A stretch of DNA of 64,000 bases, from positions 62,001 to 126,000 of the forward strand of contig NW_026865315.1 of the NCBI RefSeq assembly GCF_026571515.1, written 5' to 3'. Under the pieces are notes generated by a model, which did no database searches, was not told the DNA's origin, and was given only the letters and a program-made list of their open reading frames with translations. Source of the DNA: Ruditapes philippinarum (lineage: Eukaryota). Shown one piece after another: positions 7,005 to 45,550 of the stretch (position 1 is the first letter of the stretch; every line of letters starts with the position of its first letter). A program made the translations under genes and the position numbers.

Positions 7005-8404
7005 AAATACAGTTAAGTGTAATTGGTTTTTCAAAATTTACTAATACTTTCGTAATAACATGATAGTCTCTCACAATAACATAAAAGGGAGATAAAATCT
7101 TTAATGTATTATTCAATTAATAAAATAATATAATTTAAAGAGTTGCATGTTTCATAAAAGTCGCCCAACTCATCAGGGAAGAAACTCTGATGTATATAAT
7201 AGTTAACCTTACAGTTTCTGTTTGTTTACGCTCATCCTAAAAGAAAACATACAAAGTACATTCAGAGGCACTTACATTTTTCGGTTTGTGAACGGATTTT
7301 ATATACAAAATTCAACATATCATACTTACTACTAAGCATTTTATTTACAATTCATTGACAAGAAAGGAGAGAAAATAACAAAACAAATATTCTACTGCAA
7401 AATGAAAAATCATTGAATGTCTGTAAATATCGTAACAAAATGAAAATACAGTATCACTATCACTAAATCTGTATGTTAACCAGTTTATACAGAAAAATGT
7501 AAGTGTCGGGTTACAAGTGTCTCTGAGTGCAGCTGTCATGCTGACGTTAATTTTTTAATTGATCTTAATTCTCAAAGTTCATATTACTGAATATTCGTTT
7601 AAATGCTCGTTATGTCTCAGAAATTATCTTATTTTGATTTCTCAAAAGATTTTTAATGTTGGTGTGCTTTTATAGTAACTACAATGTATCCAAAAAGTAA
7701 CATTACCTGAACAACCTTTTTTATTTGTTGCTTTTTATAAATTAGTACAGTTATATTGATCTTTTTTATTTTGTATGAAGTCACAGTAACGTTACTACAA
7801 ATGTACTTTGTTTTCCCTCTTTTAGGAAATTTATTGTACATTTATTGCTATACTTCCTTCAGATAACAAGCATCTAAACTTCTTTTCAATTTTTATTTAA
7901 CATTATAAAATTCATATTAATTCTACCTTTCTAATGAAGTAAAAAAAACTTTGTTTTTCACAAGCCGCTAAATTAAGGAATAAATAACACTAGGATAGAA
8001 TAAAATAGCTTTTTCCCTTTTACAGCCAGTTCTAAATTCATAATTATTTTTACCGAAAAGTAATATATTTATAGTGTTTTAATGATCTAGAAATTTGTTT
8101 AACATTTTACCGAGTGACAAAATGTCGATTAGCTTTATGTTAATCGGGAAAATTAAAAGTGAATTTTTCATATATTTTTTAGATTTTTCCATAAGACAAA
8201 CAGATAAACAAGTTAGAGTAGTGTTACTCATATTTCAAGCGTTTATGACGCAATCACACATATATTCGTGTATATTGTCAAAAGAGCTGTCCCATATTTG
8301 TTTTTCTTTAAAAAATGTTGACAATAAATAATTAATGTTATCTATTTGATAAAACCTGCAAGTTAATTGTTTAGATTGAAGTAATGCATCATACACTACT
8401 TCCA

Positions 8405-30046: not shown

Positions 30047-30405
30047 ATTTATTTTTTAAAACAATAGCGCAATGCTTACCGTATTAAAACCTTAACATAA
30101 AAAATTGTTCATGAATGAGGATATGTTACAAGTATCTACCTGTACAAATGATTGAGTTGTATGTTAAGGATGTGAAACAACTTCCTTGTTTGTTTCTCGT
30201 TAAAAAAATTTATTCTCTGAATATAAATATCTTCCTGGTCTGAAGCTAATCCCAATCGTAACTCAAATCTTTACAACTATGACCTTAAAATTACGTATAT
30301 TAACTTTTTAACAAATTTTCTATTCCGTTTGTGCTACCAAATATTCAAATACTGCATTTGTTTAGAAAACCTTTGAAACTTCTAAACGTATGGTATGTTT
30401 TGTTT

Positions 30406-30439
30406 ACTTTCGGTTTTCAGAACGCTTACTTTCGCTTTT
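30406..30439 (-). promoter_or_regulatory. Pair of IRF/ISRE-like elements upstream of HSPA12
   Basis: Minus-strand GAAAACCGAAAGT (30406-30418) and AAAAGCGAAAGT (30428-30439), 22 bp apart; match the IRF consensus AAA-NN-GAAA. Confidence 0.5.
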
Positions 30440-31590
30440 AAGAACGGAAAACAGAAGTATTGGTTCTAGCAATGAACATGATAACATAAAAGAACTAGCT
30501 TGATTTAACATTTTAAGATCCATTTAATTTGGTAAAATACATCTACAATATAAAATATCTCTACTCCAGTCTGAACATTTTAAACAAACTGGAAGGCTTT
30601 CAGTCGGAAATAGAATCATCGTAGTTACTGTCATATCATATGATTATTTTAATTTAATAATCTACAATAAATCCCCCATTTAAACAAGTTAATCTACCTT
30701 GTTATGTTGAAATATATTATTATGACTTACGCGCTGCCACCGTTGAAATGATATCTAATTTACTTCCTATTTTACGACTTCTACGAAACCGCCAAGGTAT
30801 TTATCAATAACGAAACCATAAATAAAGTGGCAACGTCGCATATTAGTAGTTTAATGTAAACCTTGTGTAAAATCGGGTTTAAAATGTTATTTAATCAATA
30901 TTAAAGCTTTCGAATTTATACAATGACTTTTTTACATTGAAAATAGTATTTGAAAGATATACTTATGTCAAGACTTCATGACATGCATTTCCAATTTTAA
31001 AATCATGTCAAATGTTTAAGCTAATATAATAGTATTGTCAATTTTAAAAGTAAGAAATAAAATAAGAATTATATTCAAAATTATATGATTAGATTGGTAA
31101 TTACAGTAATTTTATATTTATAACATACTTTAAAAATCATCCTTATTGATCTTGTATCATTTATCTTCGTAAACAAGTATACTTGTAAAACTAATTACAA
31201 GTAATTCATAACACTTATGGTAGCTGTGAATCGAGATATATATAATAATGTTTATATATTATGTAATTACCTTATTAAAATTATACTTATAATTAGATAC
31301 TCTTAAAGAATTTTGCACTATGGTACAGTTAAGGGACACTATTGAGAAAAAAAACGAAACAAAAAATGTATAGGATTTTTATTCAAGTGTATTTTATGAT
31401 AAATTCCGTCGGACTGGTAAATCAAAACTGTCCATTGTTGACAGATTTCTTACAATGAAGAGATACGAAAGTTTTGCTTTCAAATATCGAACCTAAGCAA
31501 TGCAATACAAGACAGGCGTGTTTTGATGTCTTTTTTATTCAAGTATGATACCAACAAACTTTCTTTAAAGGCAATGCATACATACTACAG

Positions 31591-31814
31591 AAATGTATTT
31601 TATGTGTCATAAAATTATTTATATGCAAGACAACATAATTCTTAATATCATTCACTTTACTTTTCTGTAAATCCGCATATATCTTATGCACTGCAGATAG
31701 AGGTCCGCATACCGAAGTTTCGTTACCGACAAATAAACGGTGCATTTATAATTAGCCTACGTCACTTCGCGTACCTCAGTGAACAGTGAACAAAGAAACT
31801 CGCATTTGCTTTTC
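31591..31814 (+). repeat. Split direct repeat A1
   Basis: Matches 42703-42920 except for a 1-nt indel and a 7-nt CAGTGAA duplication. Confidence 0.95.
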
Positions 31815-32246
31815 TCTCAATCAAATTGTGTATTACTTTTGTTTTTCTACATTTACATTTAAATAATCAGCGGAATTGTATCATCGACGTCTTTGGGTAT
31901 TATATTTCACCGTGTTTACGTGGATATAAACTTATCTAGACTGCTTACGAAGGATTTTTATCGACCAAAATTTTCAAACAAAGGAAGTAGGTCAACAGGG
32001 ACGCTTCAACCGAACAACTATCTATCTATCTCTGGATACTGCCAACCCCTCTTACGAGTGTTAAAGGCAGGAATTTAGTGCACGTCGGATTGTTAGTAAA
32101 AGGTGAAGAGAAAAGCTAAAAAGAAAAGTCCAAACATTGACATGCTTGGAAGGTGAGACTGAGAATGTATTCTAGTCATGGTTAAAATGTTAATAGTGAA
32201 ACAAGATGATAAGAGATAAAATAGTTTAAAAACACTGGGAGTAAGA

Positions 32247-35200
32247 CTAGTACTGCAAACCCACCACTGCCTGTTTGAACTGACTCAGGTTGGGCAGGGT
32301 GGCAATGTTACTAGGAAGTTTATTCCATAGTATAATGCTATGAGGGAAGAAAGAGTACTTATGGTAGTCGGAGGATACCTGTATTTGACGTAGGGATAAG
32401 GGATGCATATGTCTGGTTAATCTATGTGGGGTTTGAACATAAGTTGGGAGATTAATTGCAACTAGGTTATGGTATATCTTATAAAACATTATCAGTCTAC
32501 AGTCCAGTCTGCGATGTTCAAGGGATCGCCAGCCCAGTTCTTCCTGCATGGCTGTGACACTAGAGTGAGGGGAGTAATCCCTTTTAACCCATCTTATTGC
32601 ACGTCTCTGGATCATCTCAACTTTGTCAATATTGGTTTTAGCATAAGGAGACCAAATAGATGAGGCATATTCAACCTGTGGGCGGACCAGGGACTTGTAT
32701 GCTAGTTCTTTTACTTTCTCATTTTTAGTGATGACATTTCTTTTAATAAAGCCAAGGGATCTGTTTGCATTGGAAGTTATTCGAGATATATGTGTATTAA
32801 ATTTAAGGTCAGCAGATAGATCTAGTCCGAGATATTTAGCATTTGTAACAGACTCTAGGATTTGGCCATGGAGCATATATTTGTGTTTAATTATGGTCTT
32901 ATTTTTGGTGATATGGATGACTTGGCATTTTGAAGGGTTAAACTCCATGTCCCACTGCTTCTCCCACAGAACCATATTGTCTAGATCATGTTGGAGAGTT
33001 GGGGGGTCTGAGGAGGAATTGATGGTTAGGTATACAGCAGTGTCGTCTGCAAATAATCTGACTTGGGATTTGAGGACAGAAGATGGTAACTTGTTGATAT
33101 ATAGAAGGAAACAGAGGGGCCCTAGGACCGAGCCTTGGGGCACTCCAGAGGTAACTGGGACTTCAGATGAGCAGTCACTATCCACAACTACTGTCTGTCT
33201 ACGGCCAATAAGGAATGACTGTATCCAGTTTAGAATTTGAGGACAAACACCATGTTCTTGCAGGGTATCTAGGAGTTTAAGATGGTTTACTTTATCGAAA
33301 GCTTTGGAGAAGTCAAGAAGTATGAGATCTGTTTGTTTGCCATTTGAAAGGTTGTTCACAAAGTAATCAGTAAGTTCAATGAGTTGTGTCTCACATGATC
33401 GTCTTACTCTGAATCCATGCTGAAGATCAAAGAGTATGTTGTGGGTGGTAAAGTGAGAGGATAGTTGAGAGGCAACTATATGTTCGAGTGTTTTACAGAG
33501 GATGCATGTAAGGGAAATTGGGCGATAGTTTGCTGGATCACTTGTATCACCTTTTTTGTAGACAGGGCATACGTTTGCACGGGTCCAGTCATTGGGAATA
33601 TTACCGGTGGTCAGGGATTTTTGGAAAAGAACTGCAACGATGTCAGCAATCTCTTCTCTCAGCTCCTTCAGGACAATTGGTCTAATGTTGTCAGGGCCGG
33701 CAGCTTTGTTGGCATTGAGGTTGGCGAGGAGCTTTAGTACACCTGCCCTACCGATGATGATGTCATTCATTTGTGGGTACTGACAATACTTTCTGGGATC
33801 CATGAGTCTCAGTTTTTGTATACATTGATCTTTAAGTGTGAGTGGTATAATTGGTGAGAAAACTGATTGAAATTGTTTGTTAAGAATGTTTGCTTTTTCA
33901 GTGTTATTAATTTTGAGAGAACCTGACTTTTGATCTTTTAATGGAGACACACTTTGTGAATCTTGTTTAGAGTTTTTTATAAGTGAGTATAGTTTTTTGG
34001 TACAAACTTTACTTTGTGTATTAGTTTCATCATCATCATCTGCAAGGTTCAGGATGTTTTCTAAGTAAGCTTCATATGATTGTTTAATTCTAGCTTTTAT
34101 TTGCGATTTCAAATTTTTAAATTTTAGCCATTGATCATGATCAGATTTATTTTTATTTGTTTTTGGTTTTTTAATATTTTTATAGAGCTGATCTCTTTTA
34201 TGAATTAATTTTTTAATGGATTTTGTTATCCAGGGCAAAGATGGTTTAGCTGTAATTCTTTTAGTGGGTATGAATTTTGATATGCCATCCTCAAGTGTGT
34301 GTTTGAACTGCGACCAAAGTTCTTCAACAGACAAAGATTCAGCTTTTTGAAGTATTTCAGATGTTGAGGTTTTAATGAAGGTTTTCAACTCAGTCCAATT
34401 TGCCTTTTTATACAAGGTGCAAGTACGAGGTTTTTGTTTGAGGAGGGTAGGCCTAGAAGATATTTCTGTGGATATGATGTCATGATCTGATATGCCAGGT
34501 ATGACCTTGACATTGTTAACAAGAGTGTGGTTTGAAATGAGCAATAGGTCAAGAATATTGTCATTTCGTGTACTTTCATTGACCATTTGTACGAGGTTAT
34601 GATCATCAATGATCTTCAGGAATTTATCATACACAGGACTTGTGTTTAAGCCTTCTTTAAGATATGGTGTATGTTCAGAGTCCCAATTTAATTTTGGGAG
34701 GTTAAAATCGCCAAGGATTAACTTTGTACCTTTTAAGTTACGCACAAGTTCAAGGGATTTTTCAAATTCTAAAATACTATTCATATCAAGTTCGTGTGGT
34801 TTGTAATAAGATGCCAGAAAGAGTGACTTACTACCTTTGATTTCTATTTTTATCCATATTATTTCACAATCGGTGTTCAGTTTTGGTTGTTCACTTGGTA
34901 GGAGGTTGTTTTTAACAAGGATAAACACTCCACCGCCCTTACCTTTGAGTCTGTCACGGCGAAAAACTGTGTAGCCGAGTTCAGGTGGGAAAATTTCACT
35001 GTTATAGTGTTCTTTATTTAGCCATGACTCTGTGGCTGTAACAATATCTGGGTTTTGATCTATTAATAAATTTTGAAATTCATGTTTTTTGTTGACTATT
35101 GACTGGCAGTTTATGCATATAATTTTCAGTTTGGATACATAATCAATTTGTTTTTGTTTTGGATTTTTGGGATTTATAGAGCTAGGTGTATCTGTATTTT

Positions 35201-35735
35201 CATCTACTAGAGGTGAGAAGCTGTTATGTGATGAGATTGAGAGGATGCTTGAAATATTCGAAAGATTTGATTCATCACATATTGTACATGTCCATGCAAA
35301 GGATGTATTGCTATTGGTTAGATCTTGGTACCATGTGCTGTTCAACCCTTGACATTGTATGTGGAACCACATACAGCAATTATCACATTCAACAGCATGG
35401 TCAGAATCTTTGACCTCAGACCCACAGCTTCCACAAGGATAATCCGGGCCAGGGTTCCGTTCAACATCGCATGAAATAGACAGCAGTAGTATGACTAGAT
35501 GTGATAAGGTCTTACTTCTATGAATTTTGGTGGGAATTTGGTGGCGTCTAAACCTAAGTTTCAGGTTGCCTACAATAATTCCACACGAGGAGATTTTTGA
35601 CGGCGACATTGCGTTTGGCAGGATGGAGGGCCTAGGATGTAGGGTAATGTTGGTTCTGATGAAATTATCTGGTACATTCACCATATAAAGTAATGTCGAG
35701 AGAAAAAGAAGGGATATAAAAATACCTACAAACAT
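32247..35735 (-). CDS. LINE polyprotein: hydrophobic leader, 2A-like motif, PHD finger, APE endonuclease, reverse transcriptase (1162 aa from the first ATG)
   Basis: PHD CGSC...CDNC..WFH..C...WTCTIC; APE motifs NCQS, TESW, GDFN, SDH; RT motifs YRPISL, QHGFR, DFSKAFD, GVPQGSVLGP, LFADD; no stops. Confidence 0.95.
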   Translation of the reverse strand: MFVGIFISLLFLSTLLYMVNVPDNFIRTNITLHPRPSILPNAMSPSKISSCGIIVGNLKLRFRRHQIPTKIHRSKTLSHLVILLLSISCDVERNPGPDYPCGSCGSEVKDSDHAVECDNCCMWFHIQCQGLNSTWYQDLTNSNTSFAWTCTICDESNLSNISSILSISSHNSFSPLVDENTDTPSSINPKNPKQKQIDYVSKLKIICINCQSIVNKKHEFQNLLIDQNPDIVTATESWLNKEHYNSEIFPPELGYTVFRRDRLKGKGGGVFILVKNNLLPSEQPKLNTDCEIIWIKIEIKGSKSLFLASYYKPHELDMNSILEFEKSLELVRNLKGTKLILGDFNLPKLNWDSEHTPYLKEGLNTSPVYDKFLKIIDDHNLVQMVNESTRNDNILDLLLISNHTLVNNVKVIPGISDHDIISTEISSRPTLLKQKPRTCTLYKKANWTELKTFIKTSTSEILQKAESLSVEELWSQFKHTLEDGISKFIPTKRITAKPSLPWITKSIKKLIHKRDQLYKNIKKPKTNKNKSDHDQWLKFKNLKSQIKARIKQSYEAYLENILNLADDDDETNTQSKVCTKKLYSLIKNSKQDSQSVSPLKDQKSGSLKINNTEKANILNKQFQSVFSPIIPLTLKDQCIQKLRLMDPRKYCQYPQMNDIIIGRAGVLKLLANLNANKAAGPDNIRPIVLKELREEIADIVAVLFQKSLTTGNIPNDWTRANVCPVYKKGDTSDPANYRPISLTCILCKTLEHIVASQLSSHFTTHNILFDLQHGFRVRRSCETQLIELTDYFVNNLSNGKQTDLILLDFSKAFDKVNHLKLLDTLQEHGVCPQILNWIQSFLIGRRQTVVVDSDCSSEVPVTSGVPQGSVLGPLCFLLYINKLPSSVLKSQVRLFADDTAVYLTINSSSDPPTLQHDLDNMVLWEKQWDMEFNPSKCQVIHITKNKTIIKHKYMLHGQILESVTNAKYLGLDLSADLKFNTHISRITSNANRSLGFIKRNVITKNEKVKELAYKSLVRPQVEYASSIWSPYAKTNIDKVEMIQRRAIRWVKRDYSPHSSVTAMQEELGWRSLEHRRLDCRLIMFYKIYHNLVAINLPTYVQTPHRLTRHMHPLSLRQIQVSSDYHKYSFFPHSIILWNKLPSNIATLPNLSQFKQAVVGLQY
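35445..35468 (-). other. 2A-like ribosomal stop-go motif DVERNPG/P
   Basis: LVILLLSISC-DVERNPGP fits D(V/I)ExNPGP with the usual upstream hydrophobic helix. Confidence 0.85.
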
Positions 35736-36007
35736 ATTGTTTACCTTTTTCTCCCACCGGAAGTTGGACAATAAAAGGTCAAGGTTGGTCTGGCGGGAAA
35801 ATTTTTTGACAGAATAGATACCTGTGACTATACTTTGGGTGTTAATTTAACAATGGATGAATGAAACTTTCATTAGATTTCTTCATTCAACGTTCTGAAC
35901 AGCAGCAGAAATGCAGTAACAGTCCGAAACACAGTGTTTACAGAGTTTTTTATGAGAGCTACGGAAATCAGCTGTTAGCAATCCGACGCATGCGCACAAC
36001 TACAACT

Positions 36008-36613
36008 ATGTCAACAACAAAGGTTTTATTATATGGTCATTCATTTGTGTCTCATTTAAAACTTTTCATTCGGAATGAACATGATCTTTCGTATTCATTT
36101 AATTTGGACCCAGCTCATTACATGGTGCAGTTTTCTGCATTCCCAGGATCAACCGTGTCGAAATTGGCTCGAAGCAGCTCGTTGGAAATTGTGAAGGATT
36201 TTGAACCTGACATTGTGCTTTTAATGATAGGAACGTGTGATCTTTACCAAACGGGCAATTATCCAGAACGTATAGCACAGGACATATGCATTCTTACGGA
36301 AAAACTATACAATGTGTACAAAGTGAAATATGTGGTCGTTTTACAAACATTACACAGAATAACCCCACGTGTTTTGTTTAAATATCCGGTGGACTGCAAA
36401 TTATTTAACAGTCAGGTGGACACATTCAACCATCATTTACATTCCCATTTGCCTAAAGGATACTCCAGATTGTGGCGATTGAAAGGCTTTTGGACAGAAA
36501 CAAATCAACAGAGGGTATTTGCTGCAGACGGCACACACTTATCTCCCCTGGGGAACAGAAAACTGTACAACAATGTTAGAGCAGCCATTATCAGTGTAAC
36601 AAAGGATTTATAA
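36008..36613 (+). CDS. SGNH/GDSL hydrolase ORF of the YR retrotransposon (native start probably MSTTKVLLYGHSF)
   Basis: Block I YGHSF, block II FPG, block III IGTCDL, block V ADGTHLS. The 49 codons upstream in the ORF track lie almost entirely inside the LINE 5' UTR. Confidence 0.85.
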   Translation: MSTTKVLLYGHSFVSHLKLFIRNEHDLSYSFNLDPAHYMVQFSAFPGSTVSKLARSSSLEIVKDFEPDIVLLMIGTCDLYQTGNYPERIAQDICILTEKLYNVYKVKYVVVLQTLHRITPRVLFKYPVDCKLFNSQVDTFNHHLHSHLPKGYSRLWRLKGFWTETNQQRVFAADGTHLSPLGNRKLYNNVRAAIISVTKDL

Positions 36614-37092
36614 ATCAAGATATGTATACATTCCATACACTGCTAGATTTTTTTTTTTTTTTCTTTAAATATCTTATCTCTCAAGACTTATAATGTCTTT
36701 ATCAAATCATTATTATCAGGATTTGAAACTGTATATCATACTATATAGCAATAGCTACATATACATAAATTTTTTTTATATTTTCTAGAGGCTTATGTAC
36801 ATGTAGATCTACTAGCTTAAAGAACCACAAGTAAAATTTACCTTATGATCCGTACATGTATTTTTCACATATACATATTTTAATTCATTTAAGTGCAGTC
36901 ATACAGCATTTATTTAGTATATCTTCTGATGTTCTAGATTCCCTCAAGGATTTAATTTACCTTTGGAATCTAATGACCCAGAATATTTTAGTTTCACACT
37001 ATAGTAAGAGTGTTTCATAGACAAAACATATTTCAGTACAGTTTATATATTTGATGAGCTAGATCATGCACTTGGGCTGGTCTGATGTTCCA

Positions 37093-37378
37093 ATATAGTA
37101 ATAGATTATGCCTGATGGCGATGATTACATTAACTCTATAGTAACAGAGTATGCCATATAAATGGCGATGATTACATTAACTCTATAGTAACAGAGTATG
37201 CCTTAAAAATGGCGATGATTACATTAACTCTATAGTAACAGAGTATGCCTTATAAATGGCGATGATAACATTTACTCTATAGTAACAGAGTATGCCTTAT
37301 AAATGGCGATGATTACACTTACTCTATAGTCGCCTTATTGCGATGATTAACACTAATATATAGTAACAGTGTTATTGT
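37093..37378 (+). repeat. 47-bp tandem array (about 6 copies) between SGNH and gag
   Basis: ATGGCGATGATTACATTAACTCTATAGTAACAGAGTATGCC units start at 37115, 37162, 37209, 37256, 37303, with degenerate ends. Confidence 0.95.
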
Positions 37379-37869
37379 ACATTACTAATAACAAATGTAT
37401 ATATTTTTTGATGAACCAGATCAATTTATAGGTAAATTTCCTAATTTGGTCCGATGTTCCAAAATTTTTCTACTTTCTACTTTCTTTTACAGAGTACATG
37501 TATAATGTACATACATATCTAAAGTAATACATAAAGTTCATTTCATATACAAATCTCCTCCGCAAACATTTTTAGTCTTAAATAATAATCAAATTTCTGG
37601 AACGACAAACAGATTTCATTAACGTTAATATATTACTTTAAACCTGATTGTATAGGTTTTTATATATACTATATTTATATTATATTAAAAAATATTTTCA
37701 ATACATCTTTGTAGTGGTACTGCTTTTTACTACTTATCTAATTTACTGTATTATACAAGAATATTCATATATTATACCTAGAGAGGGTTATCTTTTATTT
37801 TTATTAAGATATTTGTTCTTTGTTTTAATGTTTTATAAATTTTTGTAGGTAAAACGGACCCGGTCAGGC

Positions 37870-39015
37870 ATGGAGGCTAGTACAGAAGCCTCTGATAGCC
37901 GAGCTCAGAAAAGGAAATCAACTAAAATACAGACAAAACGAGGACAGAGAAAATCTTCCTCTACCAATGTAAAATCGCTTTTAAAAACAGGAACTAAAAT
38001 CGGTTCAAATAAAGACATTAATAGAAGCAGAAGAGCACCCCCTCCCAGAAAGAAGGCTAAGAGTAAGAACCAATCAATGCCGGTAGACCCCACAGAAGAT
38101 GATATCTCAGTGGAAACTGACCAAGAATCCTCAACATCCAGTGATGGTTCAGATTCAGACATGGATGATGTGAATTTCAGTCAAATTACGGCTAATCACA
38201 CAAATAATTTCTTTCAAAATGGTGGGTATGATGGCACTCTTCTAAATACACCCATTTCTACCCCTATTTCCCCACAGATTAACAAAAAACTAAAGAATAA
38301 AATCTGGTCTGACGCATACATTGATATGGCAGACCTTCTACCAATGCAACCCTCATCCACCAATACCAATCAATTTACGCTTCAAATAAACAACTTCGCC
38401 TCAAATAACGTAAGCCTAGCTCCATCTCACAAACCCAGAAAAATTTTCAACATTGAGACTTGGACAACTGCCTTTCTGCGATTTGTAGCTGTTTATTCGG
38501 AAAAATTTCCATACTTAACAGCTGCTCTGATGAAATATGCTGAAGTAGTCCGGGATATATCAACCCGTCGACCAGGACTGGCGTGGCAAAATTATGACAC
38601 ACAGTTCCGATTACTGAAATCCCAGATGGGCATGCCTTGGGATACAATGCATTACGAACTTTGGTTAAAGGCATGCACCGATCCAACTCCCTATACGCAG
38701 TCAAGTCCCCGGCCCTTTCGTTCAGAATTCCCATCAAATAGACGCTGGAACAAACCTAAACCTTCCCAACCCTTGTCAAAGTTTTGGCCAAATACATGCT
38801 GGCCTTACAATAGACAAGACTGCAGGTCAACTAACTGCACATTACCCCATGTCTGTGGTTTCTGTAAAGGTACCCATCATGCAGGCCAGTGCCATTATCG
38901 AAACAGAGAGCATGCAGCTCAATCCCTCCTCGGCCAAAACCAAGGGAAACAATCCAATTTCACCAAACCACAGTCTGTTAAATATGTGCAAAAACCAGCT
39001 TCCCACCCCCATTGA
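37870..39015 (+). CDS. Gag-like ORF of the YR retrotransposon
   Basis: Basic then acidic N-terminus; YIDMADLL, WTTAFLRF, WQNYDTQFR; C-terminal CCCH plus CCHC-type Cys/His cluster (CWPYN...C....C..PHVCGFCKGTHHAGQC). Confidence 0.88.
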   Translation: MEASTEASDSRAQKRKSTKIQTKRGQRKSSSTNVKSLLKTGTKIGSNKDINRSRRAPPPRKKAKSKNQSMPVDPTEDDISVETDQESSTSSDGSDSDMDDVNFSQITANHTNNFFQNGGYDGTLLNTPISTPISPQINKKLKNKIWSDAYIDMADLLPMQPSSTNTNQFTLQINNFASNNVSLAPSHKPRKIFNIETWTTAFLRFVAVYSEKFPYLTAALMKYAEVVRDISTRRPGLAWQNYDTQFRLLKSQMGMPWDTMHYELWLKACTDPTPYTQSSPRPFRSEFPSNRRWNKPKPSQPLSKFWPNTCWPYNRQDCRSTNCTLPHVCGFCKGTHHAGQCHYRNREHAAQSLLGQNQGKQSNFTKPQSVKYVQKPASHPH

Positions 39016-40564
39016 AATTCAACCCCTCATTTCCTTATTACAAGGTTATAACGACATAAACTACATAAAAAATGGTTTCCAAGAGGGTTTCATTTAGGTT
39101 ATATAGGTGATAGGTCAGCATGCGATAGTAGAAATTTGAAATCTTGCATGGAATATCCAGAAATTGTAGAAAGAAAACTGGAAGCCGAGAAAAAACATAA
39201 TAGAATTGCTGGTCCATTTGAAGTATCTCCCTTCGATAATTTAAAAATTAGCCCAATAGGAGTTGTTGAAAAGAAAACACCAGGTCAATACCGTCTTATT
39301 CATCATTTAAGTTACCCAGCAGGTTCTTCAGTAAACGATTTTATAGATCCTTCATTATCAACAGTAAGTTACACATCATTTGATGATGCCGTCAACCTCC
39401 TCATTAAGTTGGGCCCTGGTTCCCTGTTCAGTAAAACAGATATTGCAGATGCCTATAGATTAATACCCATTCATCCAGATGATCATAGCTTGTTAGGTTT
39501 CAAATTCAAAGACCAAATTTATTTTGACAAATGTCTGCCTATGGGAGCTTCCAGCAGTTGTGCCATCTTCGAACGGTTTAGCTCTAGCCTTGAGTGGATT
39601 GCAAAGAAAAATTGCTAATTCCACATATAATACACATTTTAGATGATTTTCTCATTATGGGCCCTCCAAAGTCAAATACATGTAAGCTCCATTTAGATAA
39701 ATTTTTGTCCATGTGTAATTCAATTGGGTACAAATTAAATCTGAAAAGACCAGCAACCATGTAATATCATTACATTTATGGGCTTAGAATTAGACTCTGT
39801 GCAAATGGTGGCCAGACTACCACAAAGATAAGCTTATTAAATTAAGACAGTTGCTATCATTTTATATCAAACGTAGGAAAATAACTCTTAAAGACATGCA
39901 AAGCTTAATTGGTCTTCTAAACTTCTGTTGCTATGTAGTCACACCTGGCAGATGTTTTCTTAGAAGATAAATTGATCTTACTAAAAAGGTCAATAAACCG
40001 AACCACCGCATTACACTTAATGCTTAAAGCCGAAAAGATATTAAAGCCTGGCAAATATTTGTGGAACATTTTAATGGAAAAAATTTACTGTTAGATGGAA
40101 AATGGTTGACAGATGAACAATTAAATTTGTTCACTGATGCATCCGGAATTTTAGGGTTTGGAGCAATATTTGGGCAACATTGGTTCTATGGTACTTGGCC
40201 GGAAAGTCTATCAAATATGGCCATTACCTTTAAAGAAATGTTCCCTATAGTAATAGCAATTGAGGTTTGGGGGCAAAAATTATGCCATAAATGCCTCGTT
40301 CTTCATTCTGATAATGAAGCTGTGGTATATATTTTAAACAAACAAACTTCCAAAAACCCTTTAGTAATGCGTTTAGTTAGACGCTTTGTATTACTTTGTA
40401 TGAAATATAATATTCTCATTAAAGCTGTCCATATCAGTGGTAAATTGAATTATCTCCCTGATCTTTTATCACGTTTACAGATAAACCAATTCAAAACAGT
40501 AGCACAACAGCACATGGATCCAGACCCCACAGACGTAACATCAATCGTGTCCGATCTCACTTAG
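38985..40564 (+). pseudogene. DIRS-type RT/RNase H ORF, disrupted in the RT and connection region
   Basis: LPTPI...GF..GF, YRLIHHLS, KTDIADAYR, LPMGASSS, HILDDF, LIGLLNF; RNase H FTDAS, KEM, SDN, DLLSR. Five +/-1 frameshifts (about 39090, 39610, 39729, 39751, 39826) and in-frame TAA at 39968 and 40025. Confidence 0.9.
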
Positions 40565-40584
40565 ACCAAACGGTCTTAGACCTC

Positions 40585-41478
40585 TTGGATAATTCTTTGT
40601 CATTGTCAACCAAACACTCATATCAACATTCATTAAAACATTTTTTCACATTTATGCAAAGTACCTACCCGGGAAAAACACATTTCCCTGTCTCTGAGTA
40701 TAAAATTGCGCAATATATAGCATACTGTTTCGAACAAGGTTACCGCTATTCCACTATACGCACTAAAATATCAGCCATTGCTTATTTACACAAAATTCAT
40801 AAATATCGCAATCCTACAGACTCATTTGTCATTTCGAAAATGTTGTATTCAATAAGAACAACCTCCACCCCGTCTGACAGTAGGCTTCCAATGACTATCC
40901 CTATATTGAAATCAATTATTCAAGCCCTTGACACGATAGTGCCCTCATCATATGACAAACTCTTGTACAGGGCTATTTTCATAGTGTCTTTCTTTGGCCT
41001 CTTAAGGATTGGGGAAATAACACTCACACCAACAGGTTCTACTAATGTCATACAAAGTAATAACCTCACTCTCCACAGGTCAAAGTCCACCCGTAAAATC
41101 AATAAAGCAACAATTTATATGCCGAAGTACAAACATTTTGATGGTAAAACCTCCACAATTATACTGAAAAAGAATTCCGATGTTACCATCTGTCCGGTTA
41201 ATGCATTAAAAAGTTACCTTAAGAGAAGGTCAGCACGGTCTGGTCAATTATTCATATGCAGAAATGACCGTACATTATTCAGTTCTACATTTCGCTCATT
41301 GTTGAGAAGTTGTGTGGAACATATAGGTTTGGATCCAACAAAATATACACCTCACTCATTCAGAATAGGTGGCGCCACACACGCTTTCAACTGTCAATAT
41401 ACTCAATTACAAATCCAGAAATTAGGCCGCTGGAAATCCAATGCTTTCAAAGGATATATTCGCCCTGTCAATTTATAA
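40585..41478 (+). CDS. Tyrosine recombinase (true start uncertain)
   Basis: LLRIGE (R), KYK (K), HSFRIG (HxxR), LGRW, FKGYIR (Y); the frame stays open upstream into the RNase H end and has no ATG ahead of the N-terminal domain. Confidence 0.93.
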   Translation: MDNSLSLSTKHSYQHSLKHFFTFMQSTYPGKTHFPVSEYKIAQYIAYCFEQGYRYSTIRTKISAIAYLHKIHKYRNPTDSFVISKMLYSIRTTSTPSDSRLPMTIPILKSIIQALDTIVPSSYDKLLYRAIFIVSFFGLLRIGEITLTPTGSTNVIQSNNLTLHRSKSTRKINKATIYMPKYKHFDGKTSTIILKKNSDVTICPVNALKSYLKRRSARSGQLFICRNDRTLFSSTFRSLLRSCVEHIGLDPTKYTPHSFRIGGATHAFNCQYTQLQIQKLGRWKSNAFKGYIRPVNL

Positions 41479-41552
41479 TACGAAAAAGTTTATGCCATAT
41501 AAAAGCTAGTGCCATCATACTACCTAGAGTGATTGTTTTGTTGTTCGCAACG

Positions 41553-42140
41553 TCCTGACTGGCTAAGGCAGCAGGATATTTGTAATATTAAATGTTAAGT
41601 AATACTGACATTGATTACTCGTTTTCACAGTTACCTGACTGGCTGAGGCAGCAGGAAATCTGTACATATGAACATTATTCAACTTGCAACTTTAACCTTA
41701 TGAACTTGTTCCTGACTGGCTGAGGCAGCAGGAAATCTGTACATATTGACACTTTTCAACTTACAATTTTTACTCTTGTTAACATGTTCCTGACTGGCTG
41801 AGGCAGCAGGAAATCTGTACATATGAACATTTTTCAACTTGGAATTTTTAACTCTTGTTAACATGTTCCTGACTGGCTTAGGCAGCAGGATATTTGTATG
41901 TATCAACATTTTTCACAACTTATATCTATTACTCTGATCATTTATATTTCCTGACTGGCTTAGGCAGCAGGATATCTGTACATATATGTAAATCTTACAG
42001 TGTATCAGCTTTAACTCTAATTCATATTTTTCTGACTAGTTAAGCAGCTATATATCTGTACATATTTATGACGGTTAATATTTTTACATTTACCTATTTG
42101 TTATTCATATTTTCATGACAGGCTTGGACAACAAGATTTT
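41553..42140 (+). repeat. 77-83-bp tandem array (8 units) with a conserved hairpin core
   Basis: CCTGACTGGCT(G/T/A)AGGCAGCAGGA at 41554, 41634, 41711, 41789, 41868, 41950; degenerate at 42031 and 42114. Confidence 0.95.
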
Positions 42141-42541
42141 AGAACATGAAAACGTTAATTGATACTTTTACATTTTGTTTCCTCATTACATTTAAAATCA
42201 TATTTCTAAATAATCTAATCTAAATTGTTATACAGGACTAAGTTAGGCAAAGGCATAATTATGAAAATATAGTTTATAAACAACAAGCATATTATACAAA
42301 TGTTATGTAGTAATACGATGATTGTTAATATTTACTTTAAACAGTATTATAGTTAAACTGTCTCACGTTACTTAGAAACTACTATGGCCAATTTATGTTT
42401 TTTACTTTTTCAATTTTATTATCATATAAGACATTTCCCATATCTTAACATTATAATTTGATATTTACACCATGTATATATTACTACCAAAAACTCAATT
42501 TTGTCTGGCGGATATGGGTTGGTTTATTGACAACCCATTTA

Positions 42542-43160
42542 TGGCGGTTTTTCCCTGCCAGATATTTCGAAAAATTACCTCATTCTTGTTCATGTTATAC
42601 TTATGGCTTAATAAAGCCCAAATATCAATCTCATAACATGGTTGTTTCTTATTTCTCCATACAAGCTTCAATTGAGTTTTTGGTGGTTGTTGCAGTTAAT
42701 ATAAATGTATTTTATGTGTCATAAAATTATTTATATGGCAAGACAACATAATTCTTAATATCATTCACTTTACTTTTCTGTAAATCCGCATATATCTTAT
42801 GCACTGCAGATAGAGGTCCGCATACCGAAGTTTCGTTACCGACAAATAAACGGTGCATTTATAATTAGCCTACGTCACTTCGCGTACCTCAGTGAACAAA
42901 GAAACTCGCATTTGCTTTTCCCACCCTCCCACCACAATTATAAATTTCCATTACAGTCTTGCAAATAAATGGTTTTGTAACTTCATGCTTATTTTTCTTT
43001 CTAGTCATATACCGATTGTTAATATTGATTTATCATGATATTTCTATTTTCTAGTTGTTATTTGGTGCTGGCGGTTTTTCCCTGCCAGATATTTCGAAAA
43101 ATTACCTCATTCTTGTTCATGTTATACTTATGGCTTAATAAAGCCCAAATATCAATCTCA
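42542..43160 (+). repeat. 3' repeat block B1 (42542-42633), A2 (42703-42920), B2 (43069-43160)
   Basis: B1 and B2 identical over 92 bp and contain AATAAA; C-rich CCACCCTCCCACC follows A2. Confidence 0.95.
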
Positions 43161-45550
43161 ATCTACAGAATGATAATATAGGGTTCCTTTACCATAAGCA
43201 GATGTTAATGTCAGTTAAAAGATTAATTAGCGCTAAACTTGTATATACAAATACATTGGGTAATTTAGCAATGTGTTATAAGTTTCATGTAAGTAAACCG
43301 GTTTCGCCATGCTTTTCAAGTGCTAAAGCGATGCAATTTCACCAACGTTTAAGTTTTTTATAATGAAAGTACAGAGGCAGTCAGTGCAGTCAATTACTTT
43401 TACATAGCTCCCTGTGTGACTCACACAAAAAGAATGCGACAATGGCGCGTGTTCCTGTGATGTTGTCCTTTACTGCATTTTTCGTTCTTTGTAAGGCCGT
43501 TCACTATTAATCAATTAATGATTAATTAATTGTTTTATTTATGTATTTTTAGTTAAGGGTCAAACTTGCAAATTGTAAACCTATTGTATTGACCTTCATG
43601 ATAAAGTATCCGTCATTTATGATTTATGATTATGAAACATACAAACACTTTCATTTCAAATACTACTAAACTGATTTCAATTTCCTTACGGCTATCATTT
43701 TGCTTGTCATAATGCCCAGTCCTGCTCCTCATCAATAATTACTTCAAGTACTGTATCATTTACTTGCAAAACTTGTAGTTTAACATAACCATATTGAAAA
43801 CATAAAGAAAATATATTCACTGACACAACAGTAAACGCAAGTTACAAGACGCTATTTCAAAGCGATTTTTATCATGGAAATTTTCGACTTTGATATTGAC
43901 AAATTTTGACGAATTCAATACGGTTGACACAGGTAGACAAACAAATATGAGGAGATAAACAAAATGCACATATTTATACACGAACAAGATGAAATGATGA
44001 TATAACATAATTAACATGTATTACATGTACGTGCAGTAGAGAAACATAAATATTCAAAAACAGTATCAAATCAATTAGGTGATCAGTAAGTGTAATATCT
44101 GAGATTTGATTTTATTAAATAAACAATATTATTATATCATTGTTATTATTATTATGTTTGACTTAATTCGTATGTAGTTTATGAGACAGCGACTTTTACG
44201 ACTGTTTTATACTTCATACTTATTCATACTTCATTTTAGTACAGACATAAACTTATGTTTTACTTAATAATAATGCAGTTTTAGTATATAAGGCAACTTT
44301 TCTTTAGTTAATGTAATTTCAGTAGAGCAGCAAATCACATGACTGAATAATTAACTGTTCTTTCAAGCTCAGTAATATTGTAATCGTAGAATCATTCCAT
44401 TAATGAAGAAGGAATGCTATTGTCCAAAATTCATCATCAATGTTATGTACCTTACGCTTTCAGCAAAATCTAGTACTGTGGCGCGACTATACTTTTCAGC
44501 GCATTACTTAAATAAATTTTATGAGTACATATTATTACTCAAATACAATGTCAGTTATATGGAATAAGTTTGCCGGAAGTTTGCGAGTAGTGTCAAACGT
44601 ATCCTTACAAAATCTTGCCGTTTGATTGGCGTAAGTCCCATTTAAATGTTGATATATTAACTGAAAAGTGCGTTTAGGTGAATGAATAAATGGACATTGG
44701 TCGTGACAAACTTGCTAATTCATTGATAACTCTTTTTCCCTAGAATTTTAACATGTGAAATATTAAAGCAATGAGTTACACTTTATTAAATTCCTTATCA
44801 CATTCAGTATTTTATGTCAAACATGAAAATAATAATAATCTCATTTTAATGGCATTTCATCCTTTTCATATAACGTTTGCGTGATAATTATAAACCGCTC
44901 TGTCACCGACTCCCAACGCTCCATGTTTACTCATGTAACATTCCCGTTAATGAAATCTATAACAGATTGAGTGAAAGCAGCTATCCGTAATGTCAGGTTG
45001 CTTATCGCGCAACGTTAGTAGTGTCTGACGTACTTGTTACGCTTACTGAATCAGACGACCATGAATTATCGCGGGATAAGGCATGAGCGATTTCGTTTTC
45101 TAATTTCATTCGGAAGATATAAGCTAGGACTATTCCTTAGTACAAGCATTTCTTGAAACGGTTCTGAATTGTAGTCTTATGTTTAAGCATTACGATTTGT
45201 AATGAAACGCAACTCTTGAAGCCTGTAGATATAAAGATGAGTATCTTACTTGTATAACAAAAACCGATTGTCCTACTACTTGTGAATATTTGACAAGCTT
45301 TTCATAGAAATAAAGAAAGGATATAGATTAAACCATTTTGTCATTTTTGAGGAAGAAATATCTAATTTCACACTCGGGGGCCAACACTTCCTTGTTTAAT
45401 TTACTTAAGTGATTTCATTTTTCACATACCGCCTCATCTCGTTAGGACAATTGTATGTGTATGACAGGTATGTGATGAATATTTTATATGTTGATATATA
45501 TATATATATTATTAGTTATAAAGATCGTTGACAGGTTATATGGTCCTATA

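What the first reader, a model, noticed from the sequence alone, without database searches (positions are those of the whole stretch)
31585..43170. YR retrotransposon with an 8-bp target-site duplication and an incomplete left end
Seen: CTACAGAA lies directly left of the element (31585-31592) and 2 nt after B2 (43163-43170). The 69 bp between B1 and the A1-matching part of A2 (42634-42702) are absent from both termini, and B2 stops at CA 18 nt after AATAAA. Established: split-repeat YR elements rebuild their ends from the internal B1/A2 junction, circularise and integrate by recombinase, generally without a TSD. Inference: this copy entered by another route. It could be endonuclease-primed reverse transcription (the nested LINE also left an 8-bp TSD), or capture of an unfinished linear cDNA whose extension along A2 stopped about 70 nt short.
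Basis: partly seen in the sequence, partly recalled or inferred. Interest (0 to 1): 0.8.

Follow-up and report, generated by a model that had tools for sequence, protein, structure and literature searches.

The report
Ngaro-like retrotransposon copy with real duplication
One copy of a tyrosine-recombinase retrotransposon in this marine animal's genome is flanked by a genuine 8-base duplication and lacks its normal right tip, so it seems to have entered by a route other than the usual recombination.

Summary
CTACAGAA lies at 31585-31592 and 43163-43170. A contig from another sample (run X5) runs from the left flank through a single CTACAGAA straight into 22 letters of the right flank. That is an empty allele, so the duplication is real and the insertion still segregates.

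The "incomplete left end" reading does not hold. All 11 other left ends examined start at the same place. The 69 bp is the outer part of the B repeat: 14 of 20 right ends examined carry it and finish at ...GCAGTTAATATAAAT. This copy lacks its right tip. It stops 18 nt after AATAAA, and three other copies stop 6-15 nt after it.

Normal copies (6 of 6) have no duplication. Some 5'-truncated fragments have duplications of 4-22 bp.

My best reading is insertion of a linear cDNA that was never circularised and ended at the poly(A) site, joined at a staggered break without normal recombination. LINE-primed copying is less likely: there is no poly(A) tail and no (GATA)n tail like that of the nested LINE family.

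Earlier scan notes cover this stretch and the same family on another piece of this genome, but none mentions the duplication.

The parts
31585..31592 (.). Left copy of the 8-bp target-site duplication CTACAGAA
   Evidence: The empty-allele contig of run X5 has it once.
31593..31814 (+). A1, the left terminal repeat. The first 2 nt (AT) are the last letters of the junction motif ATATAAAT, and GTATTTT starts at 31595.
   Evidence: The start point is the same as in all 11 other left ends examined.
31890..32020 (+). Start of the element's first ORF, which has a weak GDSL/SGNH-hydrolase match. It is cut here by the LINE and continues at 35993-36613. The start coordinate is approximate.
   Evidence: Mapped from L041 ORF 794-1531. 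The Pfam hits are below the curated cut-offs.
32021..35992 (-). Nested LINE with a 1174-aa ORF carrying PHD, AP-endonuclease and RT domains. Its 3' end is on the left with a (GATA)n tail. It is flanked by ACAACTA (7 exact, or 9 of 10).
   Evidence: It is absent from 4 of 4 other full-length copies.
35993..36613 (+). Rest of the first ORF (GDSL-like)
37094..37349 (+). 47-bp tandem repeats inside the element
37870..39015 (+). 381-aa ORF with no Pfam match. By its position it could be Gag-like (inferred).
39136..39618 (+). Reverse-transcriptase fragment. The RT-RNase H frame is interrupted in this copy; copy C5461 has one 476-aa ORF.
40061..40564 (+). RNase H part
40585..41478 (+). Tyrosine recombinase ORF (Phage_integrase plus N-terminal SAM-like domain)
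41541..42144 (+). Tandem array of about 78 bp in the 3' untranslated part
   Evidence: Also present in the other copies.
42542..42706 (+). Full internal B repeat.
42707..42920 (+). A2, the internal copy of A
42921..43068 (+). X, a unique 148 bp between A2 and B2
43069..43160 (+). B2, truncated. It ends 18 nt after AATAAA (43137-43142) and lacks the distal 69-73 bp that normal right ends have.
43161..43162 (.). Two letters (AT) between B2 and the duplication. They are either filler or the last two letters of the junction motif.
43163..43170 (.). Right copy of the duplication CTACAGAA

Best explanation
The element is an Ngaro-like tyrosine-recombinase retrotransposon with the layout A1-[ORFs]-B1A2-X-B2. 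In this family the full B repeat is about 163 bp and contains AATAAA in its middle.

Normal copies end at ...GCAGTTAATATAAAT and start at GTATTTT, behind a flank that also ends in an ATAAAT-like motif. They have no duplication. This fits recombinase crossover between a circle junction (B-A, kept as a template inside the element as B1A2) and a look-alike target.

The window copy is an off-pathway product. Its right end is where the RNA is expected to be cut (18 nt after AATAAA). The distal 69-73 bp of B, which must be rebuilt from the internal B1A2 copy before the circle can close, was never added. The linear cDNA was joined to chromosomal DNA at a break with an 8-nt stagger, whose fill-in gave CTACAGAA on both sides.

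Shown: the duplication, the empty allele, the missing right tip, and the family's normal ends.
Inferred: that the right end is an RNA 3' end, that the molecule was a linear cDNA, and what made the staggered break.
For: - Empty allele with a single octamer.
- 14 of 20 right ends examined carry the distal B part. Four, including this one, stop 6, 15, 15 and 18 nt after AATAAA. That is a 15-nt zone, whereas random deletions would scatter.
- Normal complete copies (4) and solo A-X-B units (2) have no flanking repeat, 6 of 6.
- 5'-truncated fragments of the same family carry duplications of 22 bp (exact), 11 bp (10 of 11), 5 bp and 4 bp. The family therefore does sometimes insert without a clean recombinase exchange.
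- DIRS-1 makes mostly linear single-stranded cDNA and needs its internal junction copy to finish retrotransposition (PMC7192593, abstract and passages read).
- Apart from AA, neither junction of the window copy resembles the family's junction motif.
Against: - No RNA data were seen. The poly(A) site is inferred from AATAAA and from where four copies end.
- The other three poly(A)-proximal copies show no duplication. Their empty sites were not seen, so later deletion is not excluded for them.
- The left end sits exactly at the normal boundary. A plain RNA-length cDNA should do this only if the RNA starts there, or if the recombinase trimmed that end.
- Break capture more often gives deletions or filler than a clean 8-bp duplication (recalled knowledge).
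- The X5 contig matches the right flank for 22 letters and then differs.
Confidence: 0.55

Rival explanations
1. A LINE endonuclease and reverse transcriptase copied the retrotransposon's RNA at a nicked target, as happens for processed pseudogenes. This would give the duplication and a right end at the RNA 3' end.
For: - A real 8-bp duplication.
- A right end 18 nt after AATAAA.
- A very abundant and young LINE family in the genome: 411 candidate loci for its 3' end, many of them 100% identical. One copy sits inside this element with a 7-10-bp duplication.
- 5'-truncated fragments with duplications exist in the retrotransposon family.
Against: - The right end has no poly(A) and no (GATA)n tail. 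The nested LINE family ends in (GATA)3-5 in 21 of 21 copies read, so its reverse transcriptase probably needs that tail (inferred).
- The 5'-truncated fragments end at the full B end, not at the poly(A) site.
- Those fragments lie next to target DNA that resembles the element's own end. Five of 7 have at least 6 of 8 letters of ATATAAAT, by my reading. This looks like annealing or recombinase targeting rather than a LINE nick.
- No target motif is shared between the two insertions, with only one example of each.
Confidence: 0.2
2. The element's own recombinase cut both strands of a poor target 8 bp apart, which is its normal stagger. It could not finish the exchange because the incoming DNA lacked a complete junction. 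Host repair then filled the 8-nt overhangs and joined the linear DNA.
For: - Tyrosine recombinases cut 6-8 bp apart, leaving 5' overhangs (recalled knowledge), and 8 bp fits this.
- The left end of the copy is at the normal recombinase boundary.
- The normal junction is a small dyad, ATATAAA-TGTAT-TTTATGT (read).
Against: - The target shows no dyad and shares only AAT|G with the junction (my reading).
- Duplications in the truncated fragments vary from 0 to 22 bp, so one fixed stagger does not explain the family.
- There is no biochemical knowledge of this enzyme.
Confidence: 0.15
3. The copy was a normal recombinase insertion that later lost its right tip, and the two octamers match by chance.
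For: Three other copies that stop near AATAAA have no duplication. Deletions are common in old repeats.
Against: - The empty allele has one octamer joined directly to the right flank. No flank was lost, and the second octamer arose with the insertion.
- The chance of such an 8-mer is 0.17%.
- Four end points fall within 15 nt.
Confidence: 0.03

Closest known systems
Ngaro retrotransposons (order DIRS), layout A1-[ORFs]-B1A2B2
   Same: - It has RT/RNase H and tyrosine recombinase ORFs, split direct repeats and no methyltransferase hit.
- It has an extra ORF with a weak SGNH/GDSL hydrolase match.
- Solo A..B units are present, as reported for Cafeteria Ngaros.
Sources; PMC9210276 and PMC8547959, passages read.
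   Different: - The hydrolase-like ORF is first here, not after the recombinase as in Xenopus.
- 148 unique bp (X) lie between A2 and B2.
- This copy has an 8-bp duplication and no right tip.
- RT phylogeny was not done.
DIRS-1 replication model (internal complementary region restores the ends; circle; recombination at a 3-bp junction without duplication)
   Same: - An internal copy of the end-to-end junction (B1A2) holds sequence that the RNA should lack.
- Normal copies share a short junction motif with the target and have no duplication.
Sources; PMC3266345 and PMC7192593, passages read.
   Different: - The repeats here are direct, not inverted.
- The shared junction motif is 4-14 nt rather than 3.
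- The window copy skipped the end restoration.
Integrase-independent insertion of Tf1 by single-strand annealing
   Same: It is a side route of a retroelement that bypasses its own integration enzyme. The 5'-truncated fragments here lie next to target DNA that resembles the element's end. Source: PMC11042837, abstract and outline read.
   Different: The window copy shows no such homology beyond 2 nt and has a clean 8-bp duplication. The host factors here are unknown.
LINE-mediated retrocopies (processed pseudogenes) and cDNA capture at chromosome breaks
   Same: A duplication, a right end at a presumed poly(A) site, and 5'-truncated relatives. The comparison rests on recalled knowledge. PMC4516963 was seen only in a search listing.
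   Different: There is no poly(A) or LINE tail. The left end is at the recombinase boundary.

Membership tests
Ngaro (tyrosine-recombinase retrotransposons) | Encodes RT/RNase H and a tyrosine recombinase | tested here: met
   RVT_1, RT_RNaseH, Phage_integrase and Phage_int_SAM_1 hits in the window and in copy L041.
Ngaro (tyrosine-recombinase retrotransposons) | Split direct repeats A1-[ORFs]-B1A2-B2, with the internal repeats downstream of the recombinase | tested here: met
   A1/A2 and B1/B2 were found. With the distal 69-73 bp counted as part of B, B1 abuts A2. X (148 bp) lies between A2 and B2.
Ngaro (tyrosine-recombinase retrotransposons) | No methyltransferase domain (this separates it from DIRS1-like and PAT-like elements) | tested here: met
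   No Dam-type hit at E<=0.01 in any ORF scanned. Only 91 nt lie between the RT-RH ORF and the recombinase ORF in L041. Only ORFs of 100-120 aa or more were scanned.
Ngaro (tyrosine-recombinase retrotransposons) | RT or recombinase groups with Ngaro in a tree | not tested
   No tree was built and no reference Ngaro proteins were fetched.
Recombinase-type insertion (no duplication, short junction motif shared with the target) | No target-site duplication; the flank ends in the junction motif | tested here: not met
   The window copy has an 8-bp duplication proven by the empty allele. The feature is met by 6 of 6 normal copies of the family.
LINE-mediated retrocopy | Target-site duplication | tested here: met
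LINE-mediated retrocopy | 3' poly(A), or the tail of the mobilising LINE | tested here: not met
   The right end is ...ATCAATCTCAAT. The LINE family ends in (GATA)n in 21 of 21 copies.
LINE-mediated retrocopy | Endonuclease target motif shared with the LINE | tested here: inconclusive
   The 21 LINE 3' flanks show no clear motif. The 5' junctions of those LINEs were not collected.
Annealing-based, integrase-independent insertion (Tf1 type) | Target homology to the cDNA end | tested here: not met
   The window copy has only AA at the left junction and none at the right. Five of 7 of the 5'-truncated fragments show a match of at least 6 of 8 to ATATAAAT beside the insertion (my reading).

The most novel reading that the evidence does not exclude
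The family may replicate with retrovirus-like logic.
- The first 92 bp of B may be an R-like segment. Seven of 10 truncated starts examined lie at -3 to +14 of its start, and four copies end at +80 to +92, just after AATAAA.
- The distal 69 bp may be U5-like.
- The short B-only fragments, whose right end is fixed at ATATAAAT, may be inserted strong-stop-type cDNAs.
- The window copy may be the complementary failure product, a full body without the transferred tip.

Both kinds would then enter the genome by a recombinase-independent route that makes duplications. That would give a natural, still-segregating record of replication intermediates for a class whose mechanism is largely unknown.
Probability: 0.2. 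Interest if true: 0.8.

Novelty: new variant of a known kind. Interest (0 to 1): 0.55.

Why it matters
Tyrosine-recombinase retrotransposons are described as inserting from circles without target-site duplications (PMC3266345, passage read). Their replication has been probed experimentally in the one system I read about, DIRS-1 (PMC7192593).

This locus is a segregating insertion with a proven 8-bp duplication and a right end at the presumed RNA end. Within the same family there are also normal copies and short duplicated fragments. Together they suggest that linear cDNAs of such elements can enter animal chromosomes without a complete recombinase reaction. They also mark where the RNA and cDNA ends may lie.

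This makes the end-restoration model testable in an animal, by mapping RNA ends and cDNA junctions and by surveying polymorphic insertions. Practically, annotation rules that exclude duplications for DIRS-order elements would misjudge such copies.

Tried and rejected
- Empty allele within the assembly: none. The left flank is unique, and the right flank has only weak partial repeats.
- Ribozyme or another known RNA at the A start that could define the ends: 0 Rfam matches at E<=1 over 31000-43700.
Four of 4 other full-length copies lack it, and only this locus has the junction. That call scored 40 of 411 candidates.
- A LINE target motif to compare with the copy's target: 21 LINE 3' flanks show no clear motif.
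- Symmetry test, asking whether the right flank resembles the A start the way the flanks of truncated fragments resemble the B end: no, about 4 of 12 letters by eye.
- Duplications in the other three poly(A)-proximal copies: none found.
- Literature: three searches and passages of six papers, plus the abstract and outline of a seventh. None of the text I read describes a duplication-flanked, poly(A)-site-ended Ngaro or DIRS copy. Supplements were closed. Supplementary file 1 (sheet 3) of PMC8547959 lists 80 Ngaro insertions and may bear on this.
Full report
OBSERVATION. The octamer CTACAGAA lies at 31585-31592, directly before ATGTATTTT. It lies again at 43163-43170, two letters (AT) after the last base of B2. 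B1 (42542-42633) and B2 (43069-43160) are identical over 92 nt, and A1 and A2 match at 99% over 166 nt. The 69 bp between B1 and A2 (42634-42702) occurs at neither end of this copy. AATAAA is at 43137-43142, and B2 ends 18 nt later. An exact 8-mer within +-3 nt of two random boundaries in this window turned up in 336 of 200000 trials.

WHAT THE ELEMENT IS. On the plus strand the element carries, in order:
- an ORF with weak GDSL/SGNH-hydrolase hits, below Pfam's cut-offs;
- a 381-aa ORF with no Pfam hit;
- reverse transcriptase and RNase H;
- a tyrosine recombinase.

In copy C5461 (L041) the RT-RNase H part is one 476-aa ORF. In the window it is split into pieces of 160 and 167 aa. No methyltransferase hit was found. 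With split direct repeats this is the Ngaro layout described in PMC9210276, PMC8547959 and PMC4157794 (passages read). I did not build a tree.

A LINE on the minus strand (32021-35992) carries PHD, endonuclease and RT domains and interrupts the first ORF. Four of 4 other full-length copies lack it. It is flanked by ACAACTA (7 exact, or 9 of 10). The window's own assembly (1.4 Gb, 15874 contigs) has at least 40 A-repeat matches. An earlier AI note calls the genome that of the Manila clam, which I did not test.

LEFT ENDS. I read 11 other left ends (L001-L011). Two of them share one flank, and one belongs to a solo unit. All 11 start at the same place as the window copy: GTATTTTATG preceded by an (AT)AAAT-like flank. 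In three loci the flank resembles up to 13-14 nt of the distal end of B. C5461 has CAGTTAACATAAAT against the internal CAGTTAATATAAAT, and C1244 and C11115 match with 1-2 nt deletions. The left end of the window copy is therefore complete. Its first two letters (AT) are the last letters of that motif.

RIGHT ENDS. A search with X plus the start of B2 gave 22 loci with an X match. I read 20 of them and left out two divergent or partial ones, C11855 and C4853.
- In 14, the repeat after X runs through the 92 bp and through the 69 bp, and stops at ...GCAGTTAATATAAAT. These are C2867, C1244, C8335, C13352, C10934, C13764, C338, C12165, C9767, C11115, C10294 and C3475, plus C15096 and C3070, which reach it after later insertions of about 220 bp and 1.8 kb.
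- Four stop soon after AATAAA: C5461 at 6 nt, C3795 and C11536 at 15 nt, and the window at 18 nt.
- Two are otherwise broken (C2482, C7334).

The '69-bp spacer' is therefore the distal part of a B repeat of about 163 bp that abuts A2. The window copy lacks its right tip, not its left.

EMPTY ALLELE. The flanks are unique in the assembly and no empty contig exists there. Among public runs of the same species label I laid four on 30400-31900.
- Run X5 comes from another sample and study than the best holder. It has a 102-nt contig (depth 20.4) lying on 31538-31592 that continues with TGATAATATAGGGTTCCTTTAC..., and those 22 letters equal window 43171-43192. The next 8 letters shown differ from the window, and the contig differs at 2 of 55 letters on the left. 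It is a divergent allele or a very close paralogue.
- Run X1, probably the source sample, has a 420-nt contig across the filled junction (31201-31620). Only 28 letters lie on the element side, under the tool's 31-letter rule for bridging.

The insertion is polymorphic. The site had one octamer before it, no flank was lost, and the AT at 43161-43162 came in with the insert.

DUPLICATIONS IN THE FAMILY. I compared the 24 nt on either side of each copy that has both ends.
- Four normal complete copies and two solo A-X-B units have nothing at the boundary (longest shared words of 3-5 nt, not adjacent).
- Seven 5'-truncated fragments end at the normal right end. C13764 has an exact 22-bp duplication, C9141 has 11 bp (10 of 11), C12165 has 5 bp, C7748 has 4 bp, and three have none.
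- Mismatched left/right pairs gave a shared word of 8 or more anywhere in the windows in 5 of 272 pairs.
- In 5 of those 7 fragments the target just left of the duplication ends in an ATATAT/ATAAAT-like string, matching the element's own right end. This is my reading.
- Of 10 truncated starts examined, 7 lie within -3 to +14 of the B start. The 10 are the seven fragments above, C11536, the extra 30-nt B piece behind C3795's right end, and the L035-L037 fragment counted once.
- Of the four poly(A)-proximal copies, only the window has a duplication.

HOW IT MOST LIKELY CAME ABOUT. Normal copies fit the accepted picture. A circle whose B-A junction equals the internal B1A2 recombines with a look-alike target, and no duplication results (PMC3266345, PMC7192593, passages read). 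The RNA should end at the poly(A) site inside B, so the distal part of B has to be restored from the internal copy. That step is inferred, by analogy with the internal complementary region of DIRS-1, which is essential there (PMC7192593).

The window copy ends where the RNA should end, and it has a real 8-bp duplication with no junction-like homology beyond AA. I read it as a linear cDNA that was never completed or circularised and was joined at a break with an 8-nt stagger. DIRS-1 cDNA is mostly linear (PMC7192593). Tf1 also has an integrase-independent side route (PMC11042837, abstract and outline read).

Points against this reading:
- No RNA ends were seen.
- The left end sits exactly at the recombinase boundary.
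- Three sister copies lack duplications.
- A clean 8-bp duplication is more typical of an enzyme than of random breaks.

RIVALS.
- LINE-primed copying would explain the duplication and the RNA-type right end. However, the nested LINE family ends in (GATA)3-5 in 21 of 21 copies read, and its 3' end has 411 candidate loci. The retrotransposon copy has neither that tail nor poly(A).
- A double cut by the element's own recombinase (6-8 bp stagger, recalled knowledge) followed by repair would fit 8 bp and the normal left boundary. The target does not resemble the junction, though, and the duplications of the truncated fragments vary from 0 to 22 bp.
- A normal insertion plus later deletion plus a chance octamer is contradicted by the empty allele.

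NOVELTY. The element is a new member of a known kind, and the family's normal behaviour is as described in the literature. The unusual part is a proven, segregating, duplication-flanked copy that ends at the presumed RNA end, together with duplicated short fragments bounded by the B start and the B end. In three literature searches and the passages I read I found no such description. Supplements were closed. The boldest reading left open is that B acts like a retroviral R region and that the odd copies are inserted replication intermediates. I give that about one chance in five.

Noticed in passing
L046 (G000:C13764:138000-140000), element at 805-1488: A 684-bp 5'-truncated copy runs from 6 nt inside B1 to the normal right end. 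It is flanked by an exact 22-bp duplication, ATCTCTGTTCCTAAATATGTAA. The target just left of the duplication ends in ATAAAT, like the element's own end.
   Followed up: partly
L031, L032, L033, L034, L039 (C9141, C7748, C15203, C8999, C3065): Five independent fragments of 135-165 bp consist only of the full B repeat. They start at -3 to +14 of the B start and end at the fixed ATATAAAT. One has an 11-bp duplication (10 of 11). They resemble strong-stop-type products.
   Followed up: partly
L043 (C3795) 8152-8181: Behind a right end that stops 15 nt after AATAAA lies an extra 30-nt piece equal to B positions 3-32. It looks as if copying jumped from the start of one B template to the end of another.
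   Followed up: no
L044 / L013 (C2867); L018 (C10934): The A-X-B unit is repeated twice in tandem at the right end of the C2867 copy. The right end in C10934 is rearranged and begins with an extra A.
   Followed up: no
L040 (C2675): This fragment starts 41 nt upstream of B1 and ends at the normal B end, directly against the flank, without A2-X-B2. Molecules or copies that end after B1 therefore exist.
   Followed up: no
window 32021-35992 (minus strand): The LINE family is very abundant and young. Its 3' end has 411 candidate loci, many of them 100% identical, all with a (GATA)3-5 tail. The window copy has an open 1174-aa ORF.
   Followed up: partly
window 42690-42726 (the B1/A2 junction): The junction reads as a small dyad, ATATAAA-TGTAT-TTTATGT, and contains a TATA-like TATAAAT. 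The preferred ATAAAT-like targets would recreate that motif in front of A1.
   Followed up: no
window 31777: A1 of this copy has a 7-nt duplication that A2 lacks. High-depth family contigs and 5 of 8 raw reads lack it too (table 4).
   Followed up: no
window 37094-37349 and 41541-42144: There are two internal tandem arrays, of 47 bp and about 78 bp. The 47-bp array has many more units in copy C2867.
   Followed up: no
window 43193 onward, compared with the run X5 contig: The empty-allele contig agrees with the right flank for 22 letters and then differs in the last 8 letters shown. This may be a variant allele, an indel or the end of a short contig.
   Followed up: no
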